IMG/VR virus record: IMGVR_UViG_3300037264_008423
Span: 124,001-188,000 of that record
Length of the DNA: 64,000 nt
Strand: one strand, 5' to 3'
A model generated the notes under the pieces. The model worked only from the letters and a program-made list of their open reading frames with translations, did no database searches and was not told the origin of the DNA. This document shows positions 2,163-61,679 of this stretch, in pieces. The translations under genes were made by a program, and so were the position numbers. How positions within the stretch are numbered: position 1 is the first letter of the stretch; the number at the start of each line of letters is the position of its first letter.

Positions 2163-2209
2163 AGCCAGTGTAAATACGTGTAGAAGAACTCAACCAAAGT
2201 TAAAAGTAT

Positions 2210-2707
2210 ATGAAGAACAATAAAATCCTCTCTCTCCTCCTGATCTTCCTTACGGCCTTGACTGTCCCTCTGGCGCTTACCGGCTGTAAAACCACGGAAA
2301 CAGGCACCAAAGTAGTGGACCCGGAGGTGGCGCGCCGGATCGCTCCGGCGATGCGCACGGCGGTTGCCGGTGCGGTCGTTTACGCCTACACCAAAGATGC
2401 CAATAGCGTTAAGTATATCGACGTGATCAAGACCGCGCTCCAGGAGTTTATTCTTTCAAACGATCTATCTCCCTCCAGTCTGCAAGCCAAGATTTACGCG
2501 CTCCCGGTTCGGGAATTGAAATCGGCTGAGGCCCAACTGATTATTACACCGCTATTGGCCGCCTATAAAGCGTTCGGAGAGGATTACGTCCGGGAGGGGC
2601 TGGGGGAACAAGAGGGGTGGAAGCTCTTAGTCAAGGCCCTCACGGACGGCATTGACGACGGTTTGCAGGGAGTGGACCAGATTAAGCAGGGCCGGTCCGG
2701 TAGCTAA
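2210..2707 (+). CDS. Putative lipoprotein
   Basis: Basic N-terminus, hydrophobic stretch and lipobox LTGC. Confidence 0.75.
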   Translation: MKNNKILSLLLIFLTALTVPLALTGCKTTETGTKVVDPEVARRIAPAMRTAVAGAVVYAYTKDANSVKYIDVIKTALQEFILSNDLSPSSLQAKIYALPVRELKSAEAQLIITPLLAAYKAFGEDYVREGLGEQEGWKLLVKALTDGIDDGLQGVDQIKQGRSGS

Positions 2708-2721
2708 GGTTGCTCCTGATT

Positions 2722-3138
2722 ATGATGCGTTTTTGGCTGGCAATTAGCTCTCTGCCGGTGCTGGCGGGGGCGGCGGCTTTGGAGATTACCAACGCCCCGG
2801 CTCCGGTCCCTTTGCCCGTGGCACCCCTGCTGCACAGCGGCTCGGAGCTGGTATCGTTTTGGAACGCTTTGATTGTGGCGGTGGTCCCTTTGGCTGTGGC
2901 CGGTATCCGCAGCGTGTTGCCACGTCTGCCCAAGCTGTTGTGGCCGGTTCTGGCGATGGTTTTTGGCGTGGCGGGGGAGTGGCTTTTGTCACAAAGCGGC
3001 GCGACCGGAGGTTCCTGGGAAGTAGGAGCCTTGTGCGGCGCGGCGGGAATTGGACTGCGCGAGATCACGAAGCAACTTTTGCCAGTTTTAATCCGATTAG
3101 ACGTGCCAAAAGGCAACGATCATAAAGAGTGTCTCTAG
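2722..3138 (+). CDS. Small multi-pass membrane protein (holin-like topology)
   Basis: Signal-like N-terminus and about 3 hydrophobic helices; follows the lipoprotein gene. Confidence 0.6.
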   Translation: MMRFWLAISSLPVLAGAAALEITNAPAPVPLPVAPLLHSGSELVSFWNALIVAVVPLAVAGIRSVLPRLPKLLWPVLAMVFGVAGEWLLSQSGATGGSWEVGALCGAAGIGLREITKQLLPVLIRLDVPKGNDHKECL

Positions 3139-3161
3139 CAGAGCTGGGGTCTTAACACGCG

Positions 3162-3196
3162 AAAGCCGACAGGGTATGGGTTCCCTGGCGGCTTTT
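3162..3196. terminator. Bidirectional intrinsic terminator
   Basis: AAAGCCG-A-CAGGG...CCCTG-G-CGGCTTTT hairpin between convergent genes. Confidence 0.65.
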
Positions 3197-3200
3197 AAAT

Positions 3201-4766
3201 TTATTGTGGCATGATGAGCAGATTAAAGCCCTGCCCCTGGAGCAGTATGCCGTTGGTGCCCAGCGGCACAGGCGTCGGCGGCGCGTTGGTGGTCGGCGGC
3301 GGGGTAGCCTCGCCTGGGCGCGACCTTAAAACGAAGGCATTGAACAGCGGTCCGGTGTGCGCGGGGGCGCTCGGCAGCCCATCAGGTTTGGCCGCCACGC
3401 GCCCACCCAGGGGCAGCGTGATGGGCTGACCCGTGTATTTGCCCGTAGCCACCGGACCGGCAAACCAATTTTGGGCGTCGCGAACCTCATAGTCCGAGTT
3501 GACGGGAATAGTGGACCCCAGGTTGATGGCGAGCTGCGGTTTAAGGTCCCAGTTGAATACCGCGAGGTTGGCTCGCCCCGTCTCGTAGCGATTGGGCCGG
3601 ATGAAGACCCGGCTGCCGGTTGGCTTACCCTTGGTGTAAACACTGGCGCTGTCGAAGCCCGTCGCGGCCCTCCAATTGGCATAAGTCAGTCCGCGCGACG
3701 CGTTGGTGTAAAACATAAAAGGCAGGTAGGGCGTTTCCAGGCTGTAGTAGGTGTTATAGTTCCAGGTGTGCCGGGTGGGCGACCACGGCAGTTGGGTTTG
3801 GTAGAACTCCAGCAGGTTTCCTGACCGGATAAACGTGTTGCCTATGGCGGTGATGCGCTCCCAGTCCGCGATGCGGCAGAAAACGTGGACAAAATTGTTG
3901 GAAAAGATCAGGTCCAGGCTGCGGCCCAGGACTTCGCCGCACTGGATTCCGCCCAAGGTGTCGTTCGGGAAGTAGAATATATTGTTTACAATCTTTATGT
4001 CCTGGGGCGGATCGCCGCCGTAGATGACAAATTCCCGCGCATTACCCGCGCGCGAAAGGCTGCCATTGTTAAAGGCAATATTGCCGTCCACCAGGTAGTG
4101 GCGCAGAAAAGCGGCGCTGGAGCCGTAAATCTGGATGCCATGATCGTAGCTGTTGAAGACGATGTTCTCCTCGATCTGTTTGCGCCCGGTGTTGTTTTGG
4201 GAATAAACTCCGTGCCCGTGTCCCCGGTCGGAACCTTGGAAGCCGTTATTGTAGATGACGCAGCCGTAAAGGAAGGAATCCGGGCCTTCCGTCCACAGGC
4301 ACGCGCCGTTGCCCAGCGTGTCGTGGATGATCAGGTTGACCAGGCCCACTCCGGGCGCTCTGATATTCAGGGCATCCAACGTTTTTAAATCGGAGGGCCA
4401 TGACCCTGGCTGGCTGGAAGTGTGGTTGGTTTGCCCACCCGCCACTTCAAAGTCGCGGTAGATGACATAGCCGCCTGAGTTTTGGGCAATGCCGCCCACC
4501 ACCCTGGCCCACTCGTTAGTGTGCGAGCGCACGGTAATAGGCAGGGAAGCGTTCCCGGCCAGCGTGCTGTAGAAAATGCCGGTGTAGGACCCGCTCCGCA
4601 GCCAGAGGGTATCGCCCGGCTTTAAACCGGCTTCGAGACCGGTTTGCAGCCCAAAAGGGGCGCTGACACTGCCGGTGCCCGTGCCGCCAGGGGCGGCGTA
4701 GAAATTGGCGGCCAGTGCCGTGCCTGCGCACGCCAGCCCCACGATCAGAGTTAAGATTGATTTCAT
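3201..4766 (-). CDS. Secreted right-handed beta-helix (pectin-lyase-like) protein
   Basis: Signal peptide ending ALA; PGDTLWLRSGSY; repeated N/G-rich beta-helix rungs (GHGVYSQN, NIVFN, GIQIY, NIAFNNG). Confidence 0.75.
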   Translation of the reverse strand: MKSILTLIVGLACAGTALAANFYAAPGGTGTGSVSAPFGLQTGLEAGLKPGDTLWLRSGSYTGIFYSTLAGNASLPITVRSHTNEWARVVGGIAQNSGGYVIYRDFEVAGGQTNHTSSQPGSWPSDLKTLDALNIRAPGVGLVNLIIHDTLGNGACLWTEGPDSFLYGCVIYNNGFQGSDRGHGHGVYSQNNTGRKQIEENIVFNSYDHGIQIYGSSAAFLRHYLVDGNIAFNNGSLSRAGNAREFVIYGGDPPQDIKIVNNIFYFPNDTLGGIQCGEVLGRSLDLIFSNNFVHVFCRIADWERITAIGNTFIRSGNLLEFYQTQLPWSPTRHTWNYNTYYSLETPYLPFMFYTNASRGLTYANWRAATGFDSASVYTKGKPTGSRVFIRPNRYETGRANLAVFNWDLKPQLAINLGSTIPVNSDYEVRDAQNWFAGPVATGKYTGQPITLPLGGRVAAKPDGLPSAPAHTGPLFNAFVLRSRPGEATPPPTTNAPPTPVPLGTNGILLQGQGFNLLIMPQ

Positions 4767-4828
4767 TTGGTTCTTTTCAGTATATTTGATTTTACTCGCG
4801 ATAACTACCAGTATATCTAATCTACACT

Positions 4829-5287
4829 ATGATTCCTAGGAATGATTTTTACGACCGCCTGGAGCACCACTGCCAGCCCTGTTCCGAGTGGGATGGCGTC
4901 TGCCTGCGGGGCCATGACCTGGCTAGTCCGACCGGCTGTCCCTTGCGCAAGTTCGCGCCCGTCCAGGCAGCCAGCTACGACCCGGACCGTGGCCGAGTCG
5001 TTCAGCCTCGGAATCAGCAGGGTTGCTCCGGCTGCGGAGCGGCCATTGACGCGGACGCGCTGCCGCCCATTACCTGGCCCCAGGTGATCGCTAATTTCGC
5101 CGCCTCGATGACCAACTGGATTAGAGCGGGGATGCCGCTGACCGACGCGAACGAGCATGGCCGCCGCTACGGAATTTGCACCCAGTGCCAGTCGCACTTT
5201 AAAGGCTACTACTGCAAGTTATGCCGGTGTGTCTGCTATATCAAAACCAAGCCGCAAACGGAGTATTGCCCCATCGGCAAATGGTGA
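4829..5287 (+). CDS. Cys-rich metal-binding protein (DUF6171-like C-terminus)
   Basis: RYGICTQC...CKLCRCVCYIKTK...CPIGKW, with a related N-terminal RLEHHCQPC...CPLRKF unit. Confidence 0.7.
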   Translation: MIPRNDFYDRLEHHCQPCSEWDGVCLRGHDLASPTGCPLRKFAPVQAASYDPDRGRVVQPRNQQGCSGCGAAIDADALPPITWPQVIANFAASMTNWIRAGMPLTDANEHGRRYGICTQCQSHFKGYYCKLCRCVCYIKTKPQTEYCPIGKW

Positions 5288-11737: not shown

Positions 11738-12778
11738 TCAGCTTACGACAATTTGATAAGTTCCGGTCAGCAGGTTATCGGACCGATACAGGTTATAGCT
11801 GCTTGCGTAACCGGAAGCATTGGTAAAGGAAATAACCGTCAAAGTCCAGGCGGTATTGGGCAGCCCGTTGACCGTGAACGTGGCCGCGCCCCAGGCCGCT
11901 GGATAAGCAAAGTAAACATACTCGGCGGCTGCTGTGAGGGTCCGGCTCTGGCTCCGGCTGCTGGCAAATTCGCCGTTCAGGGCGATGATTTGCGCGTCAT
12001 TCAAGGTGGATTGGTTGGAGACGCCCCAGTAACGCTTGTTACTGAAGCTGATGCTGGTATTGCCGTTGACGGGAGTGGTGCCATCCGTGGCGCTGAGTGT
12101 GTAGGTCCGGTTCGCGGTCCAGGTTCCCGCGTCCGCGTAGCTGCGCTGGGCTACAGGGAGCACCCCGATGCCCTGGTTGATCGACTGACCGGTGACATCC
12201 TTGTTGAACACCCAGTTGAGCGTGACACTGCTGACCGTTTGGCCAATTTCCACCGTGCCGACTGTATTTGTAAACGAAGTCAACTGGAGCGGCACGTAGA
12301 GCAGGTAATTGAGCGCGGCGGCCACGTTCGGGTAATCGAGGCTGGAATAAGGAACATCAACGGCGGAAATCTGGTTGGTTCCGGTGCCGAAGTCAACGTG
12401 GTTGAGATGGACGGTCCGGTCCTCGTCGCGGATGTAGTCCAGCGATCCGACCATCTGGTAAGTGGTCCAGGCCAAGTTGCTGCCGGAGACCGCGATGCTT
12501 TCCACGGCGGCGATCTCGGCCCGGATCTCGACAAAAGGATCGGCGGGTCCCTGGCTGATCATGGCCAGGGCGGACCAGTAGTCGGAATGGTTGCCTTCCG
12601 GGGCGGTGCCGGATACCGAGATTAAGGCAATGTATTTGGCTCCCTGGAAATCAATGGCATCGCGGGGACTATAGGTGCCTGAGTCGGCGTAGGTGCCGCG
12701 CAAGCGCAACTCGGACTCGGCCACGACGGTGCGCCGGTAAAGATGATCCGCGTATGCATATTGGTTTAGAGACGCCAT
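11738..12778 (-). CDS. Virion structural/tail-fibre-associated protein
   Basis: Start MASLNQY (GTAAGTA upstream); CBM5/12-like RGTY...Y...GAKYIAL...YW module; beta-rich C-terminus YVYFAYPAAWG. Confidence 0.65.
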   Translation of the reverse strand: MASLNQYAYADHLYRRTVVAESELRLRGTYADSGTYSPRDAIDFQGAKYIALISVSGTAPEGNHSDYWSALAMISQGPADPFVEIRAEIAAVESIAVSGSNLAWTTYQMVGSLDYIRDEDRTVHLNHVDFGTGTNQISAVDVPYSSLDYPNVAAALNYLLYVPLQLTSFTNTVGTVEIGQTVSSVTLNWVFNKDVTGQSINQGIGVLPVAQRSYADAGTWTANRTYTLSATDGTTPVNGNTSISFSNKRYWGVSNQSTLNDAQIIALNGEFASSRSQSRTLTAAAEYVYFAYPAAWGAATFTVNGLPNTAWTLTVISFTNASGYASSYNLYRSDNLLTGTYQIVVS

Positions 12779-12795
12779 CACTTTACTTACATGGA

Positions 12796-13533
12796 TTAAG
12801 GTGGTTGTGAAACCCTGCCGATGACCTGGCCTGTGCGTGTCTGAGTGAGTCCGCCCACGGTTTCTGTCCAAGCGCCCGTCAGAGCGCCGCCCGTGGGCGC
12901 GTCATTCATGGGGCAAAAGAGTAACAGGTTAGCGAGTTCAATGGTAGGAGGAAGATTTCTTGCGCCTGTGGCCAGGGAGAGGATTTGCGCGTCGGATAGC
13001 TGTTTATTCCAGATGGCAGCGTCGCACATGTAGCCGGAAAAATTAACAGTAGTGCTGCCGTTGTCCACGGCAATCCACCAATCATTGCCGCTTCCCCATA
13101 AGGTTGTAATGGGAGAGGGGGTGCCCTCTTGCGCGCCATTCACGTAAAGCCGCATCTGACCTCCATTTTTGGCGCTCACCGTCACATGATACCAGGTATT
13201 TACGGCGACTACAGTCGTGCCATAGACGTTCTTTACGCTGCCATCGTAGGTGTAGGCAATCCAGTTAGTCGCGCCGTTTTGGTGCATCGCGTGGGACCAC
13301 CCGCTGCTAGGGTCGCCCCCGCTGCGCGTAAAAATACCGGCATTATTCAAAACTTGGGCCGGTCTTAGCCACGCGGCCAGTGTGTATTCCGTGGGAGTGG
13401 CCGTCATACCGCCGCCGAAAAAGCGAGTGTAAACAGATCCACTAAAGTCATATACCCGGCTTTCGGCCACGGGCGCTGCTGCCGCTCTGGCCAGGGAGCC
13501 GACAAAAGAAGGATTACGCAGGCTTAAGCTCAT
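12796..13533 (-). CDS. LamG/concanavalin-A-like lectin domain protein
   Basis: YTLAAWLRP, NTWYHVTV, RLYVNG, FSGYMCDAAIWNKQLSDAQI. Confidence 0.85.
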   Translation of the reverse strand: MSLSLRNPSFVGSLARAAAAPVAESRVYDFSGSVYTRFFGGGMTATPTEYTLAAWLRPAQVLNNAGIFTRSGGDPSSGWSHAMHQNGATNWIAYTYDGSVKNVYGTTVVAVNTWYHVTVSAKNGGQMRLYVNGAQEGTPSPITTLWGSGNDWWIAVDNGSTTVNFSGYMCDAAIWNKQLSDAQILSLATGARNLPPTIELANLLLFCPMNDAPTGGALTGAWTETVGGLTQTRTGQVIGRVSQPP

Positions 13534-14957: not shown

Positions 14958-14977
14958 GCCCTAATTACGTTTCAATC

Positions 14978-15006
14978 CGCGCCCCGCATTTTTTGACCGG
15001 GGCGCG
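14978..15006. terminator. GC-rich hairpin, possible terminator
   Basis: CGCGCCCCG...CGGGGCGCG between the early block and the fibre operon; lacks a clear U-tract. Confidence 0.4.
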
Positions 15007-15007
15007 C

Positions 15008-15610
15008 TTACGGCGGGGAGGAAACGGTTAGGCTGGTGTCTGATTTAAGCTCGGCTTCCATGTGTTCCAACGCTAGGCTAAACTGCTCCGCCAAGTAGGG
15101 GACCTGGGCGTTGAAGATGGAAATCGGGTTTTCGGCTAGCGTGGAAAATTCGGCGCGGTCCGCCTTATTGACGTTGGGTTTGGCCTGAAGCTCCTTGGCG
15201 ATGGTCAGAAGCTTAACACACCCTTCGGTCAGATCGCACATTTGTAAACGAAACTTTTCCACGATCTCCTCACGTAAGGTGGTCTCCTGATCGTAAGGTT
15301 CAATTTGTTTGCCGTCGCGATGGTTGATGGTGCAGGGCACTCCGTTACCGTGGTTCAACGAGCAAAACAACTGGGCAAATTGCAGGGGGGTGAGCGTAAG
15401 ACTGAGAATGCGCTTGCGTTCGTGGTAATAGCGTTTCTTAGTCATAGGGTCTTGCACCATTTCCGCTTCGCTGATTTCCAACGAGACGCGACTGTGAACT
15501 GGCATGGTGCTGCCGAAAACCCGCTCGCTTGTGCCTGTGCTTCGGGCCACGGAAATGAGAGCGAAAGAGGGATGGCTAATGTTGTTGTCTTTTCCTTTGT
15601 CTTTTTTCAT
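15008..15610 (-). CDS. Hypothetical phage protein
   Basis: Start MKKDKG; HPSF...GVPCTI motif. Confidence 0.75.
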   Translation of the reverse strand: MKKDKGKDNNISHPSFALISVARSTGTSERVFGSTMPVHSRVSLEISEAEMVQDPMTKKRYYHERKRILSLTLTPLQFAQLFCSLNHGNGVPCTINHRDGKQIEPYDQETTLREEIVEKFRLQMCDLTEGCVKLLTIAKELQAKPNVNKADRAEFSTLAENPISIFNAQVPYLAEQFSLALEHMEAELKSDTSLTVSSPP

Positions 15611-15767: not shown

Positions 15768-15794
15768 AGGTTTGTAATGTAAATAAGTTTAACT

Positions 15795-16163: not shown

Positions 16164-16175
16164 GAGAGCGGCTGG

Positions 16176-16418: not shown

Positions 16419-16451
16419 AGTTCAATCGGGTGTTCGCAGTTTCTTTACATT

Positions 16452-16826: not shown

Positions 16827-16898
16827 AATTATCGTTTTGCTTTTTCCAATTTAAATCATAGTGTTGATTATTAGAGCTAAGCCGACTGTCTGGTATAA

Positions 16899-16927: not shown

Positions 16928-17031
16928 GCTCTAAAATGTAAAATCGCGCATAAGCTTGATGGGAGCGGGGTTGGGCCGCTACCTCGACGGTTTAAAAAAG
17001 TTAGGGCTGCCAACAATGTAATTAAGCCAGA

Positions 17032-18106: not shown

Positions 18107-18117
18107 AACGAGAATAA

Positions 18118-18405
18118 CTACGGAAGGATCAAGCTTATCGGAATGCCCATGACGTTGAGCATCCGCTGGCGCAAACGGTCAATCTCCTGCTCGACATCAG
18201 TAAAGTGCGCGCCGTCAGGCATTGTCTTAAAGTCAAGTGTGATGTAGTTGGCGGGTGCCTCCACCACCCGCATGGCAAGCAGCCCTACGTGTGATTCAGT
18301 CGCTAAGTCAAAGGACTTGGCCCACCGGTCCAACCATTCTTGACTGTGCTCGATGAGTCCGGGCGGCGGGTAATCATCAGACATGAGTTCAAGGGATTCG
18401 TTCAT
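18118..18405 (-). CDS. Hypothetical protein
   Basis: 95-aa ORF in operon. Confidence 0.65.
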   Translation of the reverse strand: MNESLELMSDDYPPPGLIEHSQEWLDRWAKSFDLATESHVGLLAMRVVEAPANYITLDFKTMPDGAHFTDVEQEIDRLRQRMLNVMGIPISLILP

Positions 18406-20101: not shown

Positions 20102-20110
20102 CAAGGCTAA

Positions 20111-20524
20111 CTACTCCACCCAGGGCACCTTGGCCGTGGCCAGCCGATGGGCATCGTCATTTTTAACGGTGCCAGCCGAATCTTCGGTAAGAACCTGGAG
20201 CTGGCCTTCGGCAAATCCCAGGCGCACGCCTGGGGGACAGTTGCGCGCCAGGCGCTTCAAGGCGCTGATCCAAAGGCGCACGGGCGGCGGCGGCGGGTCT
20301 TGGAGCCGATACTTGAGCTGGACCTTGGCGCTTTCCAGGAAGTCCCGGCCTCGCGCGCTAAGCTGAAATCGCTCCACTTGGTCGGGCGCGGCCAGCGCGC
20401 CCTGATGGTCCACCGGCTGGATAAAGGCCCGGTAGCGCATCATTTTGAGATAGTTGGCGCTCGTGGGCTGAAGGCGGCCATCGGCAACCGTTTGCAGCAA
20501 AGAGACAGGCGGGGTTCGGGTCAT
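20111..20524 (-). CDS. Hypothetical protein
   Basis: 137 aa, ATGA-coupled. Confidence 0.65.
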   Translation of the reverse strand: MTRTPPVSLLQTVADGRLQPTSANYLKMMRYRAFIQPVDHQGALAAPDQVERFQLSARGRDFLESAKVQLKYRLQDPPPPPVRLWISALKRLARNCPPGVRLGFAEGQLQVLTEDSAGTVKNDDAHRLATAKVPWVE

Positions 20525-24670: not shown

Positions 24671-24741
24671 GTTTACATTTTATTTTACAAGTTGTGAACC
24701 GGCGCTATCCTGCTCCCCAAGAGAACGTATTTAAAGTTGCT

Positions 24742-33139: not shown

Positions 33140-33252
33140 GCCTTTAACTGTCGTAACTACAATCTGCCCCGCCCTGCCATCGGCGCTCGGTTTTGTAAAC
33201 AATTAGCGGCTTGCTTTGTGCCTACAAGCATATGGATGCTGTTTTGGATTTA

Positions 33253-35463: not shown

Positions 35464-35514
35464 AGGCAGACAGAACGGGTTTTTCGTAAGCAATTTTAAT
35501 CTGGTATGTAGTTT

Positions 35515-51055: not shown

Positions 51056-51086
51056 AGCCTTAAAGAACGATTTGGTTCTAGCCCTC

Positions 51087-54000
51087 ATGCCAGAAAATGA
51101 GCAAGTCGATGCGGAGACCAAAAAACCACGGGCACCCCTGCGGGTTTTTCGCACCCACGCGGGTGAGCCGGTCAGCTACACGGGGGTCAAAAAGTTTTTT
51201 AAGGACATCATCACCTACCACAACGGCTCCCGGATGGAGGGCAAGCGCGAGCTGGTGGAGCTGGCGGACCCCAACCTGCCGTTAGGCGACCGTCCGCTGA
51301 TACCCGGCAGGCACAGCCCGGTGTGCGCCGCGTGCGGCCTGGACCAGATGGGAGCCAAGCGGCCCTACCTGGAATATGCGGGGCCAGACCGACCGGTGGT
51401 CACGATCCTGGTGGAATGCGTGTCTAAAAGGGACGATGATCGGGGACAGATCGGGGTGGGCAACCCTATCGCCTACCTGTCCAGCCTCATCTACCGGCTG
51501 GAATCGGTCCATAAGGTAAGCCTGGGCGAGATCCGCTGGGTTCCCATCACACGGTGCGCCTACCGGGAGGGAAAACCTCCCAACTACAAAACGAAAGGCA
51601 ATTGGTGCCGTTACCACGCCATCCAAGACCTGATCCTCCATCCGCCCAAAGTGGTCATTCCCGTGGGCACGGACGTGCTGGGCCTTCTATCCCACAAAAG
51701 CAACGCCCAAGACTGGAGCGGACGGCTTTTAACCTGGCGGGGCTGGCCTGATGACTGGCTCACGGAACCGGACTACATACTGGACCGGACCGATCCCGCG
51801 CACAAGGAAGGCACGGTGCGCGGACACCCTATCTTTGGACCGGCCCCCCAGGTAAGGATACCAATGGTGCCACTGCAAAGTCAGCGAATCGTGCTGGCCG
51901 CGCAGAACGAAGTGGTCACCCGGCGCTGGGTGGACCATTTGATTTACGCGCTTAAGGTGGGAAAAATGGAAATCCCGCCTCCCGACTATATCCGGCCCTG
52001 GTATCACCTTAGCCTCGATCCGCAGGAGATTATCCAAATCTTGCAGACGGTGATTCAGTATGCTAATGCGCACCCGCCCTTTCGCGTGGCTTACGACACC
52101 GAAACTACCGGGTTGAAGGCATGGGCTTACTATAAGCGCGTGAGCGCCGATGAGGTCACCCGCTCCGCTGATCCCCGCATTGTGTTCATGATGTTCCGCT
52201 GGGTTAACCCGGAAACACAGCAGCCGGAATCGCTGGGCTTTCCCTGGGACTACCCGGAGAGCGAGCTGAAGCCGTTTTTACAGGCCATCACACCCTACGT
52301 GGTCGAACTGCTGGCCACGGCCAGCATCGTGGGCCACAACTTGACCTTCGATGAATTGTTCACCATCGCGACGGTGGGCACCGAGCCAGCCGAGCACGAG
52401 CCTTTTACGCCGGACGGCGCGCTCAATCCATCCTGGCTGTGGCTGCAAGACCGAATTAACCTGCTCGCAAGCGCGATGGGCTGGGATACCTGGCACATGG
52501 CTTTCACCGTTCAGAAGCGACGCGGGAGCTTGGGTCTGGAAGTCATTACTTATGGCTACGCCCCTGATTTGGCCGGTTACGAGGAGGACATGACCCTGCT
52601 GATTGATCTGCATGGCGATCTGATGAACCCCGCCAATAATAAGGGAGGCCACTACGCCAATTGTCCCAAGCCTCTGTGGGAGACTCACTTAAAACCCTAC
52701 GTGATGGGCGACGTGGAAGCGACCTATCGGGCCAGGGACGCGCTGGCCGTGGAACTGAGCCAGACCCAAGGCTACCGTATCCCGATGGCCAAGCCAGGGG
52801 TTCCCGGACGCTTCCGCTACTACACCTGTCCCAACCGGGAGTGGGTTTACCAAAATATCATGGTCCCCGCCTCGCGAACGCTCACCAAAATAATGGCCAG
52901 GGGTATGCACATCGACGCCGAGGAACTGATCACCCAGGAACAGGTTTACCCCGAACGCGTGGAAGCCGCCAAGCGCGAATTGCGCGACGTGGACCCGGCC
53001 ATTAGCGCCTGGTGCCAGACCAAACTGAGCGAATCCCAGCAGGTGAAAGAGGGCCAGTCCTCCGAGGATCGGGTGCTGTGGGAACTGGATCTGGAAAATA
53101 AAAGTCAGTTGAAGGAGCTGCTGTTCCAGGTCTTAAAGTGTCCCATCCAACGCATGACAAAGAGCGGACGTAAAATTTATGGCGATGAACTCGCTGGCTG
53201 GGAACACCTGGAATGCGCGATCAAGCTCGAATACGCGGCAGTGGACAAATACACCCTGAACCGGCTAGCCGTGGATCACCCCAACCTGCGTCCGCTCCAG
53301 CAATATCGTAAAGAGTTCAAGCTCTATTCCACCTATGTGCGGCCTTTGCGCAACATGATGGCCGAGCGCCTGGACAAAAAGCAGCGGGTCAAGGAGCCAC
53401 ACCTGTCCGTGGACCACTGCATTCATGCTCAATTTATGCTGACCGGGACACGGGGAGGGCGTCTGTCCTGCCGCGACCCCAACCTGCAACAGCTTCCGAA
53501 TGACGGCAAGGTGAAGCGCCTTTTTAGTTCCCGATTTGGCTCTCGTGGCTGTATCTATGCCGCCGATCTCAGCCAGATCGAGCTGCGCCTTATGGCGGCG
53601 GCCTGTGGTGACGCGTCAATGGTTGGCGCGTATTTGAACGATGTTGATCTTCACTCCTTGACCGCCAGCAAAATCGCCTGGAGCGACGGTAAGATCTCCT
53701 ACGAGGAGTTCACGAAGAAGCACATGGAGAAGCTCCAGCACGAGGGCCACGCGGACCAGGCCAAGGATTTGGAACTGAAGCGTAAGATCGCAAAAACCGT
53801 AAACTTTTTAACGGGTTACGGCGGCGGTGCTTTTGGTTTACAAAATGTTCTTGCGAACAACCAGGTTTACATTACGCTGGAAGAGTGCGAGCACATTATC
53901 GACTCGTTCTTTGAAGCTTATCCCGCGCTTCAGCGTTTCCTGGGGGTTTACAAGGATTTCATCTTAACCAACGCGTGCGCCGTGTCGCTCTTTGGCCGGG

Positions 54001-54419
54001 TGCGCTTTTTCGAGGAAGTCCGGGGCGAAGACCAGGAGGCGACCAGCAAGGCGCTTCGCGCTGGCTGCAACCACCTGATTCAAAGCACGGCCAGCGACAT
54101 GATGCTGCTGTGCCTGATCACTATCGAGGCGCTCATGCGCGATGCCGGATTAAATTCCCTGCTGGTTTCCACGGTCCACGACAGCTTGGTTGTGGATGCG
54201 CTGCGCGAAGAGTTGCCGCAGATCCATGACATCGCGTATGGGGTGATGAACGACATCCCCACGGTCATTCAGTCCATGCTGCCTGGCTACGATACGTCCT
54301 GGATGATTGTGCCGCTGGCCGGGGATAGCGAAGTGGGCTTGAACTACCTGGAAACCAATAAAATATCCGGGTCCAACCCGGACTGGGAGGCTCTGCTGCA
54401 ACCCTGGAAGAAGGGATAG
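51087..54419 (+). CDS. polA: Family A DNA polymerase with N-terminal uracil-DNA-glycosylase-like domain and 3'-5' exonuclease
   Basis: CAACGL...TRC...WC...PKVVIPVG UDG-like; YDTETTGL, GHNLTFD exonuclease; GRLS..PNLQQ, DLSQIELR, AKTVNF..GYG, TVHDS. Confidence 0.95.
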   Translation: MPENEQVDAETKKPRAPLRVFRTHAGEPVSYTGVKKFFKDIITYHNGSRMEGKRELVELADPNLPLGDRPLIPGRHSPVCAACGLDQMGAKRPYLEYAGPDRPVVTILVECVSKRDDDRGQIGVGNPIAYLSSLIYRLESVHKVSLGEIRWVPITRCAYREGKPPNYKTKGNWCRYHAIQDLILHPPKVVIPVGTDVLGLLSHKSNAQDWSGRLLTWRGWPDDWLTEPDYILDRTDPAHKEGTVRGHPIFGPAPQVRIPMVPLQSQRIVLAAQNEVVTRRWVDHLIYALKVGKMEIPPPDYIRPWYHLSLDPQEIIQILQTVIQYANAHPPFRVAYDTETTGLKAWAYYKRVSADEVTRSADPRIVFMMFRWVNPETQQPESLGFPWDYPESELKPFLQAITPYVVELLATASIVGHNLTFDELFTIATVGTEPAEHEPFTPDGALNPSWLWLQDRINLLASAMGWDTWHMAFTVQKRRGSLGLEVITYGYAPDLAGYEEDMTLLIDLHGDLMNPANNKGGHYANCPKPLWETHLKPYVMGDVEATYRARDALAVELSQTQGYRIPMAKPGVPGRFRYYTCPNREWVYQNIMVPASRTLTKIMARGMHIDAEELITQEQVYPERVEAAKRELRDVDPAISAWCQTKLSESQQVKEGQSSEDRVLWELDLENKSQLKELLFQVLKCPIQRMTKSGRKIYGDELAGWEHLECAIKLEYAAVDKYTLNRLAVDHPNLRPLQQYRKEFKLYSTYVRPLRNMMAERLDKKQRVKEPHLSVDHCIHAQFMLTGTRGGRLSCRDPNLQQLPNDGKVKRLFSSRFGSRGCIYAADLSQIELRLMAAACGDASMVGAYLNDVDLHSLTASKIAWSDGKISYEEFTKKHMEKLQHEGHADQAKDLELKRKIAKTVNFLTGYGGGAFGLQNVLANNQVYITLEECEHIIDSFFEAYPALQRFLGVYKDFILTNACAVSLFGRVRFFEEVRGEDQEATSKALRAGCNHLIQSTASDMMLLCLITIEALMRDAGLNSLLVSTVHDSLVVDALREELPQIHDIAYGVMNDIPTVIQSMLPGYDTSWMIVPLAGDSEVGLNYLETNKISGSNPDWEALLQPWKKG

Positions 54420-54429
54420 TAATTAGAGT

Positions 54430-55344
54430 GTGAATGCGAGATTGATCATCGAAAAGTTGGCGGCTCTGGATGAAGCACCGGTCGCACCAGAAGTTGAGCC
54501 GGATGTGAAACCGGGAGTGGAGCCAGATGCGCCTCCCGCGCCGTCACGTCCCAGGCGGACTGAACCGGCGCGGCCCACGCGCCCTTCCCCCAGCCCGTGG
54601 ACGGTGCCCCCGGACTACGAGCCGGGCACTTTTCCGAGGCCCAAGGCGGAGGACGAATCCGAATCGATTGAATCCTGGCTGGAAGTGACCCAGCAGCCGA
54701 TCCGCGATTGGGAGTGGGATGGCAATCATCTGCGATTGATCATGCTGGACGGCTCCGTGGAGACCTACACCCGCGATCAACTGTCTGAATTTGGCGTGTT
54801 TGACTCCGGGGAAAGCCAGGCTTTCGCGGAGAGCCAGGACGACGATGATGACGACGCTGGCCAGGCGGAGGCAGAAGAGGATGATACCGAGGATGAAGAG
54901 GGCGCTGCCGAGAGTCCTTTTGGCGATGAGGGAGAGAGCTTAGATTCCTGCCCTTGTCCCGCTGGAGCGCCTTCCGGGCCGGACAGCACCATCCAGAGCA
55001 TTCTAGGGGGTGAGGACACGCAAGTTATCACCGGCGAGCCAGCCGAGCGCCTCGCCTCGGCGGTGAGTGACGTAGTTTCGGCGATTATCGGATTGGTCAC
55101 CGGCGACAGTCCGCCTGCGGGTGATCCCACAGGTGATTCCGCCTGCGGCGCGGCTTCAGGAGAATTAGATTTGGCCGCCTCGGATCAGCGGCCCGACGAG
55201 GATTACGACCAGGGCCAACTGGCCCAAGGCGTCGAAGTGGAGCAGGAGCACACCCAGGACATGGACGAGGCCAAAAAGATCGCCAAAGACCACCTGGACG
55301 AGGACCCGCGTTACTACACCAAACTTAACCAGATGGAGGGCTGA
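54430..55344 (+). CDS. Acidic protein with C-terminal DUF5661-like domain
   Basis: GVEVEQEHT.D...AKKIAKDHLDEDPRYYTKL; GTAATTA 4 nt upstream. Confidence 0.8.
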   Translation: MNARLIIEKLAALDEAPVAPEVEPDVKPGVEPDAPPAPSRPRRTEPARPTRPSPSPWTVPPDYEPGTFPRPKAEDESESIESWLEVTQQPIRDWEWDGNHLRLIMLDGSVETYTRDQLSEFGVFDSGESQAFAESQDDDDDDAGQAEAEEDDTEDEEGAAESPFGDEGESLDSCPCPAGAPSGPDSTIQSILGGEDTQVITGEPAERLASAVSDVVSAIIGLVTGDSPPAGDPTGDSACGAASGELDLAASDQRPDEDYDQGQLAQGVEVEQEHTQDMDEAKKIAKDHLDEDPRYYTKLNQMEG

Positions 55345-56980: not shown

Positions 56981-57021
56981 AATTATTTTTGTTTACAAAT
57001 TCTACCCCATGCATCATCTTA

Positions 57022-59621: not shown

Positions 59622-59696
59622 AAACCGTATTTAGAGAAAGAAAATTATGCCGACGCGCCAAGCCGAATCACAGAAGATCGCAGCCGCCGCGCGCAC

Positions 59697-59770
59697 GCGG
59701 GTATGGTCTAACAGCAGAACGAGGCGGTGCCAGCGCTTAGGTGGGGGTGCGATTCCCCCTACCCGCTCCA
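59697..59770 (+). tRNA. tRNA-Gly(GCC)
   Basis: GCGGGTA/TACCCGC acceptor, U73, CCA; anticodon loop GTGCCAG; T-loop TGCGATT. Confidence 0.9.
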
Positions 59771-59779
59771 AATTTAGAA

Positions 59780-59850
59780 TGCTACCGGTCTCAACGGTGA
59801 CGTGATTCAGACCACTGAGTCATCCGAGTTCTATCCTCGGCGGCTGCACC
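59780..59850 (+). pseudogene. tRNA-like element or degenerate tRNA
   Basis: T-arm CCGAG-TTCTATC-CTCGG, stem TGATTCAG/CTGAGTCA, imperfect acceptor stem. Confidence 0.35.
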
Positions 59851-59852
59851 GT

Positions 59853-59928
59853 GGGGGCGCATGTTCCGTAGCGGCGAGATTGCCTTGCAAGCAAACTGGG
59901 TCGGGTGCGACTCCCGTCACCTCCACCA
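59853..59928 (+). tRNA. tRNA-Ala(TGC)
   Basis: G3-U70, A73, CCA; loop CTTGCAA; T-loop TGCGACT; atypical D arm. Confidence 0.8.
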
Positions 59929-59934
59929 AATCTT

Positions 59935-59963
59935 TTGACAGATTTTTTTGCGCGCGGTAAGGT
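59935..59963 (+). promoter_or_regulatory. Sigma70-like promoter (leaderless)
   Basis: TTGACA-N17-TAAGGT, 5 nt before ATG 59969. Confidence 0.75.
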
Positions 59964-59968
59964 CAAGT

Positions 59969-60157
59969 ATGAAACGTAAACACTTTCTATATGGCCTGCT
60001 CGCAGGCGCGGCGTCCACTTTAATGCTGGTCTTGTTCCTAGGCGCGGCAGATCCCACTTGGCTGGACATCGCAAGCAGCCTGAAGCGGATCGCCCATTCC
60101 CTGGAGATGATCTCCGGCCAGCGGCCCGGTTGGAAAATTCCATACGCGGGTAAATGA
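59969..60157 (+). CDS. Small exported/membrane protein inside the tRNA array
   Basis: MKRKHFLYGLLAGAASTLMLVLFLGAA signal-like N-terminus. Confidence 0.7.
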   Translation: MKRKHFLYGLLAGAASTLMLVLFLGAADPTWLDIASSLKRIAHSLEMISGQRPGWKIPYAGK

Positions 60158-60162
60158 CCTTC

Positions 60163-60236
60163 GGGGCCATAGCTCAATAGCAGAGCGGGTCGTTCGCAAC
60201 GACTAGATCGGGGTGCGACTCCCCGTGGTTCCACCA
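60163..60236 (+). tRNA. tRNA-Ala(CGC)
   Basis: GGGGCCA/TGGTTCC, G3-U70, loop TTCGCAA, CCA. Confidence 0.9.
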
Positions 60237-60241
60237 GATTT

Positions 60242-60316
60242 CGGCTGCGTAGCTCAATAGCAGAGCGTGCGCGTCACATGCACAAGGAACCCGTGCGATT
60301 CGGGCGTGGCCGACCA
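60242..60316 (+). tRNA. tRNA-Val(CAC), apparent 8/4 fold
   Basis: CGGCTGCG/CGTGGCCG acceptor, CCCG/CGGG T-stem, loop GTCACAT, A73, CCA. Confidence 0.75.
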
Positions 60317-60332
60317 TTTTGTTCTAAAGCTT

Positions 60333-60776
60333 GTGATCAATAGTAAACAAATCAAAGCTGAATTAGCCGTCATAAAGGTGCAGGAAGCGGCACTTAAAAT
60401 GGGCCGGATATGCAGCAAACCTGTCATTGAAGGGACGCGCTACGATTTGATAGTTGATGACGGTAAGCGTCTTATGCGCGTTCAAGTCAAATACTGTGGT
60501 GGTTATTACGATGGCGTTGTTGCGGTTAAACTTAAAAGTTATGGTAGGCAGGGGGCAGACCGTAGCTATTGCGCCAGTGAAATCGACGCCGTTATAGCCT
60601 ATTCTGATGTGAATGACCGGCTTTATTGTCTGCCGATTACTATGCTAGCGGACAAAACAACCATCCGCTTGCGCCATGCTCGTCCTAGAAACAATCAAAA
60701 GCAGCGGATTTGGCAGGCAGAAGACTTTATATGGGGCTGTAGCTCAAATAGGCAGAGCAGCACGATGGCATCGTGA
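60333..60776 (+). CDS. PD-(D/E)XK homing-type endonuclease (group I intron-associated family)
   Basis: KAELAV, RYDLIVD, RVQVK, Y..SEID; GTG start 7 nt after GTTCT; 3' end overlaps tRNA-Ala(GGC). Confidence 0.85.
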   Translation: MINSKQIKAELAVIKVQEAALKMGRICSKPVIEGTRYDLIVDDGKRLMRVQVKYCGGYYDGVVAVKLKSYGRQGADRSYCASEIDAVIAYSDVNDRLYCLPITMLADKTTIRLRHARPRNNQKQRIWQAEDFIWGCSSNRQSSTMAS

Positions 60777-60809
60777 AGGTTGAGGGTGCGATTCCCTTCG
60801 GTTCCACCA
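60733..60809 (+). tRNA. tRNA-Ala(GGC)
   Basis: GGGGCTG/CGGTTCC, loop ATGGCAT, T-loop TGCGATT, ACCA. Confidence 0.85.
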
Positions 60810-60815
60810 ATTTTT

Positions 60816-61031
60816 GCCAATAAGCTGGGCGGTTGATCGAGACTTCCGTCTGGCCGAACGCGGTTACGATCAGCCGGGGGAACCGGTAAAACCTACGGCT
60901 GTTGGGAGCGAGGCTTGCCGAGCAGCAGGCCGCTTTGGCAGTATTTCACGGCACCCAACGTGGGACGGCGGCAGGCCGGTCGTGCGGTCTGTAAACGCGA
61001 CTCCGCCCGTCAGCGTAAAACAGGTGCCGTG
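60816..61031 (+). ncRNA. Structured ncRNA candidate (two multi-stem domains)
   Basis: CGGTTGATCG/CGATCAGCCG, GGCTTGC/GCAGGCC, CACGGCACC/GGTGCCGTG, CAGGCCG/CGGTCTG; lies between tRNAs. Confidence 0.55.
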
Positions 61032-61034
61032 TTT

Positions 61035-61110
61035 ACGGCAGTAGCTCAATTAGCAGAGCGGCGGTCTCCAAAACCGTTGGTTGGGGGTGCGAGTCCTCCC
61101 TGCCGTGCCA
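61035..61110 (+). tRNA. tRNA-Trp(CCA)
   Basis: ACGGCAG/CTGCCGT, loop CTCCAAA, G73, CCA. Confidence 0.92.
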
Positions 61111-61113
61111 TTT

Positions 61114-61353
61114 TTAGCGCGCGGGTTTTACTTTGCGCCGGGCGCGCGCCTTGCTTTTAGCAATGGGCGCTTGTTGGACATAACTCGGACACTTCGGGTT
61201 TTCGCAGTGACCGCCTTTTTTCACCAACCAGCCGCAAGCGCATTGGCTGAAGCAGTCACATTTTAAGAATCCCTGGGTGCCGCACGTGGGACAGACCACC
61301 GTGGCATCGATCAGGCGCTCAATGGCGCTCAAAGGTTTAGTTTGCATCGGCAT
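61114..61353 (-). CDS. Small Cys-rich protein antisense to the tRNA array
   Basis: CPTC..CDC..CACG..CENPKC. Confidence 0.6.
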   Translation of the reverse strand: MPMQTKPLSAIERLIDATVVCPTCGTQGFLKCDCFSQCACGWLVKKGGHCENPKCPSYVQQAPIAKSKARARRKVKPAR

Positions 61354-61378
61354 ACACTAAGTCATAGAATCAATTTTA

Positions 61379-61463
61379 CCCACAGTCCAGAAAGAGTGGA
61401 GGAAGGTCCCTACGCGCCACAGCGGAAGTAACGGGGCCAGGACCACAGTGGTTTGGACTGGGG
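61379..61463 (+). ncRNA. Rod-like hairpin RNA candidate
   Basis: CAGTCCAGA/TTTGGACTG, GTGG/CCAC, GGTCCC/GGGGCC nested stems with purine-rich internal loops. Confidence 0.45.
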
Positions 61464-61468
61464 TGAAC

Positions 61469-61556
61469 GGGCGTGTGACCGGAGCAGCAATCGGCACGGG
61501 CTGTAAACCCGTCGGCCTAAAAACCTACGCAGGTGCGAGTCCTGCCACGCCCCCCA
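61469..61556 (+). tRNA. tRNA-Tyr(GTA)
   Basis: GGGCGTG/CACGCCC, loop CTGTAAA, long variable arm, unusual C73, CCA. Confidence 0.88.
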
Positions 61557-61561
61557 TTTTA

Positions 61562-61650
61562 AGCGCCGTAGCTCAGAGGCAGAGCAAACCCAAAGCCTGT
61601 AACCAGGTGAGCGGTGGGGATGAGAGGTTCGAGTCCAATCCGGCGCACCA
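61562..61650 (+). ncRNA. tRNA-like RNA with expanded anticodon arm
   Basis: GCGCCG/CGGCGC-ACCA, canonical D arm and GGTTCGAGTCC, but a 24-nt insert in place of the anticodon loop. Confidence 0.6.
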
Positions 61651-61679
61651 TTCTTCCGTCTGGCGGTGTAATTAAAGGC

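What the first reader, a model, noticed from the sequence alone, without database searches (positions are those of the whole stretch)
2171..61674. GTANTTA: candidate late promoter placed directly on start codons
Seen, with spacer to start codon: 2171-2177(-) 8 nt; 14962-14968(-) 4; 17018-17024(+) 7; 18115-18121(-) 8; 20108-20114(-) 6; 24727-24733(+) 8; 33154-33160(-) 14; 54419-54425(+) 4; 61668-61674(+) 5. It also occurs at 4802-4808(-) and 59627-59633(+), with variants GTAAGTA 12784-12790(-) and GTATGTA 35504-35510(+). Most targets are structural or tagged genes. I see no shared -35 element or SD sequence. Established: T4 late promoters are a lone -10 element (TATAAATA) read by gp55. Inference: a phage sigma factor makes leaderless or near-leaderless late mRNAs.
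Basis: partly seen in the sequence, partly recalled or inferred. Interest (0 to 1): 0.7.

Follow-up and report, generated by a model that had tools for sequence, protein, structure and literature searches.

The report
Phage promoter-like motif abutting start codons
A 7-base signal, GTA(A/G/T)TTA, sits 4-8 bases in front of the start codons of about 35 mostly virion genes in an uncultured 238-kb phage and its relatives; it looks like a minimal promoter making mRNAs with almost no leader, but no transcript ends could be mapped and no phage sigma factor was found.

Summary
All coordinates and spacers check out. The motif's total count is only modestly raised (19 in the window against about 10 expected), but its position is far from chance. 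Genome-wide, 32 of 54 copies are followed within 15 nt by an ATG or GTG that opens a long ORF, against 15% for 300 composition-matched control motifs. Six related metagenomic phage contigs show the same pattern. Orthologous genes keep the motif while flanks, spacer length and start codon change.

There is no -35 element and no Shine-Dalgarno use anywhere in the genome. Two further motif classes also abut start codons: GTTCTA, and a canonical TTGAC-N17-TACATT sigma-70-type promoter. Leaderless or near-leaderless architecture is therefore a property of the whole phage, not only of this motif.

Genes behind GTADTTA are mostly virion genes (baseplate hub, tail fibres, portal) and homing-type endonucleases. 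Genes behind GTTCTA include the DNA polymerase, methyltransferases and tRNAs.

A promoter is the best reading. The motif occurs in 22-nt divergent gaps, after terminator hairpins, 38 nt before one portal gene and 63 nt before a tRNA. No transcription start could be mapped. No gp55-like, sigma-70-like, T7-like or multisubunit polymerase gene was found.

Verdict: a new variant of a known kind, of moderate interest.

The parts
2171..2177 (-). GTATTTA, 8 nt before ATG 2162 (gene 1707-2162, 151 aa, unknown function). It lies in a 47-nt divergent gap.
4802..4808 (-). GTAGTTA, 35 nt before ATG 4766 (gene 3201-4766, 521 aa). It lies in a 62-nt divergent gap with an A-rich spacer. Possible longer-leader case.
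12784..12790 (-). Variant GTAAGTA (position 5 is G), 2 nt before GTG 12781 and 5 nt before ATG 12778 (gene 11738-12778). Position 5 is the only tolerant core position.
14962..14968 (-). GTAATTA, 4 nt before ATG 14957 (gene 13530-14957, 475 aa, tail-fibre-like as a lead only). A GC-rich hairpin lies just upstream.
17018..17024 (+). GTAATTA, 7 nt before ATG 17032 (gene 17032-17352, 106 aa). Divergent gap.
18115..18121 (-). GTAGTTA, 8 nt before ATG 18106 (gene 17690-18106, 138 aa). The TAG at motif positions 2-4 is the stop codon of the upstream gene 18118-18405.
20108..20114 (-). GTAGTTA, 6 nt before ATG 20101 (gene 19490-20101, 203 aa, N-terminal HTH). The motif's TAG is the stop codon of the upstream gene 20111-20524.
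24727..24733 (+). GTATTTA, 8 nt before ATG 24742 (ORF to 26481, 579 aa). Two TTTACA-type -10-like elements lie 40-55 nt further upstream (24672, 24684).
33154..33160 (-). GTAGTTA, 14 nt before ATG 33139 (gene 31934-33139, 401 aa). A TGTTTACAA element lies 34 nt further upstream (33194-33199).
35504..35510 (+). Variant GTATGTA, 4 nt before ATG 35515 (gene 35515-35922, 135 aa).
54419..54425 (+). GTAATTA, 4 nt before GTG 54430 (ORF 54430-55344, 304 aa). It starts on the last base of the DNA polymerase stop codon (gene 51087-54419).
59627..59633 (+). GTATTTA directly after a hairpin plus T-run, 63 nt before tRNA-Gly (59697-59770) at the head of a tRNA cluster.
61668..61674 (+). GTAATTA, 5 nt before ATG 61680 (ORF 61680-62102, 140 aa). 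The ORF resembles, by eye only (not run against Pfam), the PD-(D/E)XK endonuclease at 60333-60776.

Best explanation
GTA(A/G/T)TTA is the core of a minimal, -35-independent promoter. It acts as a -10-like element and is used by an uncultured clade of roughly 235-250-kb tailed phages, mainly for virion genes and homing-type endonuclease genes.

It is most probably read by the host's RNA polymerase after a phage-encoded specificity factor or sigma-remodelling factor redirects it. That factor has not been identified.

Transcription would start a few bases downstream, at or just before the ATG or GTG 4-8 nt away. The mRNAs would then be leaderless or have leaders of only a few bases, and would be translated without a Shine-Dalgarno sequence.

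Shown:
- the motif, its placement and its conservation;
- the lack of a -35 element and of SD use;
- the same placement for the phage's canonical sigma-70-type promoters.

Inferred:
- that transcription starts there;
- the late timing;
- the identity of the polymerase and factor.
For: Positional enrichment:
- 32 of 54 copies are start-linked, against 15% for controls.
- 23 observed against 1.2 expected in shuffled upstream regions.

Independent replication in relatives from other samples:
- 10/18, 6/6, 10/15 and 3/8 copies start-linked, against about 16% for controls.
- 4/4 and 5/7 in two more distant contigs. About six of those nine start codons match the sources' own gene calls.

Conservation:
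- In eight orthologous gene families the 7-mer is kept while upstream flanks diverge, the spacer changes (4 to 14 nt) and ATG swaps with GTG.
- No upstream element is conserved in 61 sites.

Contexts that a translation signal does not explain:
- 8 of 32 sites lie in divergent gaps. One ortholog family has only about 22 nt between two divergent start codons.
- Some sites directly follow a hairpin plus T-run: window 59627, genome positions 72225 and 212873, and the portal genes of relatives.
- The portal gene keeps the motif at 7, 7 and 9 nt in relatives but at 38 nt in this genome.
- One site heads a tRNA cluster.
- Only about 35 of about 300 genes carry the motif. The rest have neither it nor an SD.

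Internal calibration:
- TTGAC-N16-18-TAnnnT promoters number 28, against 8.2 +/- 2.6 expected. About ten end 5-10 nt before an ATG.
- GTTCTA sits a modal 6 nt before start codons.
- In their modal spacings all three elements begin at -11/-12 relative to the first base of the start codon. That is where a -10 element sits relative to a transcription start.

Other support:
- The base before the start codon is a pyrimidine in 49 of 60 sites, and the codon starts with a purine. This matches the usual Y(-1)R(+1) start-site preference (established knowledge).
- Targets with a function are baseplate hub, tail-fibre-like proteins, portal, sheath (in one relative), giant ORFs and endonucleases.
- GTTCTA targets are the DNA polymerase, methyltransferases, a GroES-like protein and tRNAs.
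- No phage RNA polymerase was detected, and host-type promoters are present. Both favour the host enzyme.

Precedents:
- A -10 element adjacent to ORFs gives leaderless mRNA in Deinococcus-Thermus (PMC12340547).
- A 5'-terminal ATG or GTG is sufficient for leaderless translation in mycobacteria (PMC4633059).
- The -35-independent late promoter of Thermus phage P23-45 is read by host polymerase remodelled by gp39 (PMC4124052).
Against: - No 5' end was mapped. Two RNA libraries hold only a few short contigs of this phage, none ending near a motif.
- No sigma or gp55 homologue was found.
- The only sigma-region-4-like hits are N-terminal HTHs. One sits in a clade-conserved double-HTH protein whose predicted fold is not a sigma fold.
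- 11 of 32 sites sit on tight same-strand gene junctions, where the motif itself supplies the upstream stop codon. In the motif-blind gene calls, 9 of 23 motif-bearing genes are at such junctions, more than for the other two classes. This also fits a translational coupling element.
- The modal 4-nt spacer is shorter than the 6-7 nt usual between a -10 hexamer and the start site.
- The sequence does not resemble TAnnnT.
- The tRNA case is a single instance.
- Virion genes are not exclusive to this motif. The sheath gene of four genomes has a TGTTTACAA element instead.
Confidence: 0.55

Rival explanations
1. It is a promoter, but it is read by a phage-encoded RNA polymerase too divergent to recognise by sequence. 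The polymerase could be hidden among the many large ORFans of 750-1982 aa. Host polymerase plus a phage factor would not be involved.
For: - The motif is short and lacks a -35, as with promoters of some phage polymerases. phiKZ nvRNAP uses TATG and AR9 uses AACA-N6-TA/G (PMC5312081).
- Most large proteins of the genome match no PHROG family.
- No sigma was found.
Against: - No match to the T7-like RNA polymerase family or to Rpb1 domain 2. The T7-family search had no positive control.
- No DxDGD-type catalytic motif occurs in any large ORF.
- The genome carries good host-type -35/-10 promoters.
- The motif sits where a -10 element would sit relative to the start codon.
Confidence: 0.15
2. It acts at the RNA level as a translation initiation or termination-reinitiation element in a system without Shine-Dalgarno sequences. 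It would stop upstream ribosomes through TAA/TAG in two frames and hand them, or a bound factor, to the ATG or GTG a few bases on.
For: - The distance to the start codon is tight, mostly 4-8 nt.
- 11 of 32 sites overlap the upstream gene's stop codon. 9 of 23 motif-bearing genes are at tight same-strand junctions.
- No SD is used anywhere, so some other aid to initiation is plausible.
Against: - 8 of 32 sites are in divergent gaps with no upstream same-strand gene. One conserved case has 22 nt between opposed start codons.
- Some sites lie directly after terminators, where little upstream transcript is expected.
- The portal orthologues keep the motif at 7-9 nt or at 38 nt.
- One site precedes a tRNA.
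- About 260 other genes are translated without it. 33 junctions use ATGA overlaps instead.
- The overlap with stop codons is forced. The motif carries stops in two of three frames and so cannot sit further inside an ORF.
Confidence: 0.15
3. It is the binding site of a phage-encoded DNA-binding regulator (activator or repressor) that overlaps the real, weakly conserved core promoters. It would not be the polymerase recognition element itself.
For: - The motif is a short invariant word on one strand near start sites.
- The clade encodes a conserved double-HTH protein (genome 70310-70885) and other HTH proteins of unknown role.
Against: - No second conserved element that could serve as the core promoter is present around the 61 sites.
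- The motif is not palindromic or repeated, as most operator sites are.
- Its position relative to the start codon matches that of the -10 hexamer of the phage's canonical promoters.
Confidence: 0.1
4. It is a chance or compositional artefact, for example an AT-rich word that simply marks intergenic DNA or stop codons.
For: Total abundance in the window is only about twice the expectation. Eight of the 19 window copies lie away from any start codon, mostly inside genes, and look like background.
Against: - None of 300 composition-matched permuted motifs reaches its start-linkage.
- Shuffled upstream regions give 1.2 against 23 observed.
- The pattern is replicated in six related contigs and kept at orthologous sites.
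- Single mismatches at positions 1-3, 6 and 7 drop to background.
Confidence: 0.01

Closest known systems
T4-type late promoters (TATAAATA read by gp55, with gp33 and the gp45 clamp)
   Same: A lone, short, AT-rich -10-like element with no -35. There are many copies, often one per late gene and inside gene clusters, in front of virion genes of a large myovirus.
   Different: - The consensus is different (GTADTTA).
- No gp55 homologue is detectable.
- T4 late mRNAs have leaders with Shine-Dalgarno sites. Here the start codon follows 4-8 nt after the motif and no SD exists.
- The replication module differs: a PolA-type polymerase and a DnaB-like helicase.
Leaderless-gene architecture of Deinococcus-Thermus and Actinobacteria: a -10 element adjacent to the ORF (PMC12340547, PMC4633059)
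   Same: - A -10-type element lies a few bases before an ATG or GTG start.
- There is no ribosome-binding site.
- Only ATG or GTG starts are seen.
- The phage's own TTGAC-N17-TACATT promoters fit this pattern exactly.
   Different: - Those elements are TAnnnT, read by the primary sigma. GTADTTA does not fit TAnnnT and has no -35.
- In those hosts, leadered and internal genes still use SD. This phage shows none.
- The host is unknown.
Thermus phage late transcription (P23-45: -35-independent extended -10 late promoter read by host polymerase remodelled by gp39; PMC4124052, PMC3950348)
   Same: Host polymerase is switched from -10/-35 promoters to -35-independent promoters by a small phage protein, without any phage sigma. 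This is a realistic model for the missing factor here.
   Different: - No TG extension or TAnnnT lies next to GTADTTA; positions -1 and -2 are unconserved.
- A gp39 homologue was not searched for.
- From my own recollection, not checked here, phiYS40 middle and late transcripts are leaderless.
Minimal promoters of jumbo-phage non-virion RNA polymerases (phiKZ TATG; AR9 AACA-N6-TA/G; PMC5312081)
   Same: Very short consensus, no -35, jumbo phage, many copies before late genes.
   Different: - No split beta/beta' genes were detected.
- AR9 5' UTRs are 26-491 nt. Here the spacer is 4-8 nt.

Membership tests
T4-type late promoter / gp55 system | Single -10-like element sufficient, with no -35 element | tested here: met
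   Information content is flat from -50 to -1 of the motif in 32 sites and in 61 sites from five genomes.
T4-type late promoter / gp55 system | Consensus TATAAATA | tested here: not met
   The consensus is GTA[AGT]TTA. Positions 1-3, 6 and 7 do not tolerate change.
T4-type late promoter / gp55 system | Phage encodes a gp55-family sigma | tested here: not met
   T4 gp55 protein, phrog_234 and phrog_12791 all gave no match in the 238-kb genome at E up to 1-10. Sigma70_r2 gave none. A very divergent factor cannot be excluded.
T4-type late promoter / gp55 system | Drives late (virion) genes | tested here: inconclusive
   - Targets with a function are baseplate hub, tail-fibre-like proteins, portal, sheath (one relative) and endonucleases.
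- Most targets are ORFans and no time course exists.
- The sheath gene of four genomes uses a different element.
T4-type late promoter / gp55 system | Transcription starts a few nt downstream of the element | not testable with these tools
   Only sparse 150-216-nt contigs are present in two RNA runs, and none ends at a motif.
Leaderless-gene promoter architecture (-10 adjacent to ORF) | -10-type element about 5-10 nt upstream of an ATG or GTG start | tested here: met
   Spacers in 61 sites: 4 nt (23), 5 (8), 7 (12), 8 (8). GTTCTA has a mode of 6 nt. The TACATT hexamer sits 5-10 nt upstream.
Leaderless-gene promoter architecture (-10 adjacent to ORF) | Element is the primary-sigma TAnnnT hexamer | tested here: not met
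   GTADTTA has A where the invariant final T of TAnnnT would be. The feature is met only by the separate TTGAC-N17-TACATT class.
Leaderless-gene promoter architecture (-10 adjacent to ORF) | No Shine-Dalgarno sequence before the start codon | tested here: met
   SD-like 4-mers occur in -20..-4 of 33 of 233 genes (14%), against 18% in in-gene controls.
Leaderless-gene promoter architecture (-10 adjacent to ORF) | mRNA 5' end coincides with the start codon | not testable with these tools
   No usable 5'-end data.
Canonical sigma-70 -35/-10 promoter | TTGACA-like -35 element 16-18 bp upstream of the -10 | tested here: not met
   No enriched word or conserved column upstream of GTADTTA.
Shine-Dalgarno ribosome-binding site | Purine-rich GGAGG-like core 5-10 nt before the start codon | tested here: not met
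   The motif is not complementary to the anti-SD core. The RRGY spacer bias leaves at most 1-2 nt between any AGG and the start codon.

The most novel reading that the evidence does not exclude
A whole clade of uncultured phages of roughly 235-250 kb runs its entire programme on leaderless or near-leaderless mRNAs, with no Shine-Dalgarno use at all. It uses three promoter classes that all abut start codons. Two of them, GTADTTA and GTTCTA, would be read through specificity factors, or a polymerase, of families that no current profile recognises.
Probability: 0.3. Interest if true: 0.65.

Novelty: new variant of a known kind. Interest (0 to 1): 0.5.

Why it matters
If the motif is a promoter, it gives a ready-made regulatory map of a phage clade known only from metagenomes: three promoter classes with distinct gene sets.

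It improves start-codon calling. Several pipeline or coding-potential calls differ from the motif-linked start.

It flags a host-phage system in which translation appears to be entirely independent of Shine-Dalgarno pairing.

It also defines a concrete search problem: find the factor that reads a 7-bp element without a -35 and without any recognisable sigma.

The general principles are known already: minimal late promoters, leaderless phage mRNAs, and -10 elements adjacent to ORFs. The advance would be a new instance and a new consensus, not a new concept.

Tried and rejected
- **RNA evidence.** One search found only a DNA run, probably the source sample. A second found two RNA runs. Laying them on window 13400-19390 and on genome 41700-47690 gave a handful of 150-216-nt contigs and no 5' ends at motifs. 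This is uninformative, not negative.
- **Specificity factor.** Sigma70_r2, T7-type RNA polymerase, Rpb1 domain 2, T4 gp55 protein, phrog_234 and phrog_12791 all gave no match. The T7-family search had no positive control. A pattern search for DxDGD found nothing in large ORFs. Sigma70_r4 gave two sub-threshold HTH hits.
- **The better HTH hit.** This 191-aa protein (genome 70310-70885) is conserved in the clade. It models as two HTHs plus a small beta-barrel (pLDDT 78) with no significant PDB match. The best matches are NusG/KOW and the paired domain at E 0.02-0.05. It is not filed as a sigma factor. The two HTH proteins are not paralogues.
- **Early-promoter-driven ORFs.** Pfam and PHROG scans showed no sigma-like domain.
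- **Closer relatives through two window proteins.** Nothing was found. No relative is in the cultured-phage collection.
- **Host identification through the NAD ligase.** Only about 35%-identical Clostridia and other hits came back, driven by the search's peptide patterns. The host stays unknown.
- **My own terminator scan.** It was too permissive to give a usable statistic. Only individual hairpin plus T-run cases read directly from the sequence are cited.
- **Major capsid protein.** It could not be identified.
- **Complex prediction with DNA.** Not run. It gives no verdict for DNA partners, and no candidate factor justified it.

Full report
**Source.** The window is bases 124,001-188,000 of a single 238,436-bp IMG/VR virus record (linear, 96% complete by CheckV, GC 57%). 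A sediment metagenome run holds it in full. PHROG matches show a tailed phage: a baseplate wedge protein, tail sheath, baseplate hub and portal. It also has a PolA-type DNA polymerase, a DnaB-like helicase, an NAD-dependent ligase and a UvsX-like recombinase. ARAGORN finds 23 tRNA genes and Rfam adds two more in the window. No cultured phage is close to it.

**The observation.** The window holds 19 exact GTANTTA matches, against 9.8 +/- 3.2 in shuffles, so abundance alone is weak. They look like background.

The real signal is positional:
- In the whole genome, 32 of 54 copies are followed within 15 nt by an ATG or GTG that opens at least 50 codons. The mean for 300 permuted motifs of identical composition is 15.4%, and none beats the real motif.
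- I called genes from coding potential alone, blind to the motif. Under those calls, 23 of 262 genes carry the motif in -25..-1. Shuffled upstream regions give 1.16 +/- 1.07.
- 43 of 54 copies lie in the 16.7% of the genome that is non-coding or at a gene edge.

**Anatomy.**
- The variable base is A, G or T, never C.
- Single mismatches at positions 1-3, 6 and 7 fall to background.
- Nothing upstream is conserved in 61 sites from five genomes, so there is no -35.
- Spacers cluster at 4-5 nt and at 7-8 nt.
- The base before the start codon is a pyrimidine in 49 of 60 sites.
- The start codon is ATG in 41 sites and GTG in 20. That is twice the genome's GTG share.

**Conservation.** The tail sheath protein found four related IMG/VR contigs with 38-66% identity, which I fetched whole.
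- The motif is start-linked there in 10/18, 6/6, 10/15 and 3/8 copies, against about 16% for controls.
- Two more distant relatives, a 235-kb and a 147-kb contig from other samples, were reached through a conserved HTH protein. They show 4/4 and 5/7, and about six of those nine start codons coincide with the sources' own gene calls.
- In eight orthologous gene families the 7-mer is kept while upstream flanks diverge, spacers vary from 4 to 14 nt, and ATG alternates with GTG.

**Context in the genome.**
- Shine-Dalgarno-like words are not enriched before genes: 14%, against 18% inside genes.
- Unbiased k-mer enrichment upstream of starts returned three classes, not one: GTA[GT]TTA, GTTCTA and TTTACAT.
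- GTTCTA has a weak A/T-rich 5' extension and sits a modal 6 nt before start codons.
- TTTACAT proved to be the -10 part of a textbook promoter, TTGAC-N17-TACATT. There are 28 matches to TTGAC-N16-18-TAnnnT, against 8.2 +/- 2.6 expected. About ten have the hexamer ending 5-10 nt before an ATG.
- So even promoters that any bacterial primary sigma would recognise are placed so that transcription should begin at or within a few bases of the start codon. In the modal spacings, all three elements begin at -11/-12 relative to the first base of the start codon. This is the strongest internal support for the leaderless reading. It also shows that the arrangement belongs to the phage-host system as a whole.

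**Promoter or translation signal?**

For a translation or reinitiation element:
- The distance to the start codon is tight.
- 11 of 32 sites overlap the stop codon of the upstream same-strand gene. The stop codon is TA[AG] at motif positions 2-4 or 6-8.
- 9 of 23 motif-bearing genes are at tight junctions.

Against it:
- The overlap is forced, because the motif carries stops in two frames.
- 8 of 32 sites lie in divergent gaps. One conserved family has only about 22 nt between opposed start codons.
- Several sites directly follow hairpin plus T-run terminators.
- The portal gene keeps the motif at 7, 7 and 9 nt in relatives but at 38 nt here, with an A/T-rich leader.
- The sheath gene of one relative has it at 17 nt.
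- One site heads a tRNA cluster.
- About 260 genes are translated without the motif. 33 junctions use ATGA overlaps.

One mechanism, a promoter, covers all of these cases.

**Which genes?**
- GTADTTA precedes the baseplate hub and its divergent neighbour, tail-fibre-like proteins, the portal and the gene before it, and giant ORFs of 1102-1982 aa. It also precedes HNH and endonuclease VII genes, and an ORF that resembles by eye a PD-(D/E)XK endonuclease.
- GTTCTA precedes the DNA polymerase, two methyltransferases, a GroES-like protein, a PD-(D/E)XK endonuclease and two tRNAs.
- This partition fits a late class against an early or middle class. It is inference from function only. The sheath gene of four genomes uses a conserved TGTTTACAA element with a roughly 58-nt leader instead.

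**Who reads it?**
- No T7-like or Rpb1-type polymerase, no DxDGD motif, no sigma-70 region 2 and no gp55 family member were found.
- Two sub-threshold sigma region 4-like HTHs turned up. One is in a clade-conserved 191-aa protein. It models as two HTHs plus a KOW-like barrel and has no significant structural match. It is a possible regulator, not a demonstrated sigma.
- Host-type promoters are present and no phage polymerase was seen. Host RNA polymerase with an unrecognised phage specificity or remodelling factor is therefore the most economical model. T4 gp55 and P23-45 gp39 (PMC4124052) are precedents. This step is inferred.

**Comparison with known systems.** The element works like a T4 late promoter: it stands alone, has no -35, occurs in many copies and precedes virion genes. 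It fails the family's sequence and gp55 tests. The placement matches the '-10 adjacent to ORF' leaderless pattern described for Deinococcus-Thermus (PMC12340547). It also matches the rule from mycobacteria that a 5'-terminal ATG or GTG suffices for leaderless translation (PMC4633059). The word itself, however, is not TAnnnT. It differs from the minimal promoters of phiKZ and AR9 non-virion polymerases, whose leaders are long and whose polymerase genes are recognisable (PMC5312081).

**Verdict.** A promoter-like, near-leaderless element is the best reading. 'Late' is plausible, and 'phage sigma factor' is unsupported. It is a new variant of a known kind, of moderate interest (0.5). Transcript 5'-end mapping is the missing decisive evidence.

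Noticed in passing
window 51075-51080(+) and 60321-60326(+); genome-wide 57 copies: A second start-proximal motif, GTTCTA, often has an A/T-rich 5' flank and sits a modal 6 nt before ATG or GTG. In the window it precedes the DNA polymerase (ATG 51087) and a PD-(D/E)XK endonuclease (GTG 60333). Elsewhere it precedes methyltransferases, a GroES-like protein and two tRNAs. It looks like a separate promoter class, early or middle.
   Followed up: partly
window 23730-23757(-), 46492-46520(+); also 24670-24689(+), 56990-56999(+), 19434-19443(-): Canonical sigma-70-type promoters of the form TTGAC-N17-TACATT, often seen as W4-TG-TTTACA-W. The -10 hexamer ends 5-10 nt before the ATG (23723, 46530). 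Genome-wide there are 28 matches, against 8.2 expected. Some copies lack the -35 and have longer leaders, such as the NAD ligase and the sheath gene.
   Followed up: partly
whole genome (upstream of 233 confident genes): There is no Shine-Dalgarno enrichment at all. T occurs at -1 in 47% of genes and C at -2 in 36%. 33 same-strand junctions are 4-nt ATGA-type overlaps. The host is unidentified but presumably initiates translation without SD pairing.
   Followed up: partly
genome 31374-31384 (L002:16374-16384): The 11-mer GTAGTTAGAAC carries GTAGTTA on one strand and GTTCTA on the other, in a short gap between two divergent genes. This would be two overlapping back-to-back promoters of different classes. 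A relative (G003) keeps it.
   Followed up: no
L001:14564-14640 and the orthologous regions of L015, L016, L017: The region upstream of the tail sheath gene is conserved in four genomes. It has TGTTTACAA, then about 35 variable nt, then TAGATAnAGAGAAAGA, 9-10 nt before the ATG. This is a leadered gene with a purine-rich conserved block of unknown role. In this genome a GTAGTTA at 14467 opens a 49-codon ORF that runs across the region.
   Followed up: no
genome 70310-70885 (L013:1462-2037): A 191-aa protein is conserved in 20 or more metagenomic relatives at 39-63% identity. It has two HTH motifs, the second sigma region 4.2-like, plus a C-terminal KOW/SH3-like barrel. It has no significant PDB match. 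It is a candidate clade-specific DNA-binding regulator.
   Followed up: partly
window 59697-62153: A tRNA cluster is interleaved with two ORFs that look like paralogues (60333-60776 and 61680-62102); only the first was matched to the PD-(D/E)XK family. The ORF ends overlap tRNAs that only Rfam called (60733-60806, 62080-62153). A tRNA-like stretch with a long insert at about 61562-61650 ends in ...GGTTCGAGTCCAATCCGGCGCACCA and is called by neither tool.
   Followed up: partly
window 13921-14311: In the DNA run, a second contig at 90-95% identity joins 13952 to 14256, skipping 303 nt with 30 other letters between. The contig breaks fall inside the tail-fibre-like gene 13530-14957. This suggests a strain-variable segment of that gene.
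   Followed up: no
genome 100466-101389 (L007:10466-11389): A 308-aa ORF driven by a sigma-70-type promoter carries a Hint (intein / homing endonuclease-associated) domain. Several HNH-AP2 and endonuclease VII genes are scattered through the genome, some behind GTADTTA.
   Followed up: no
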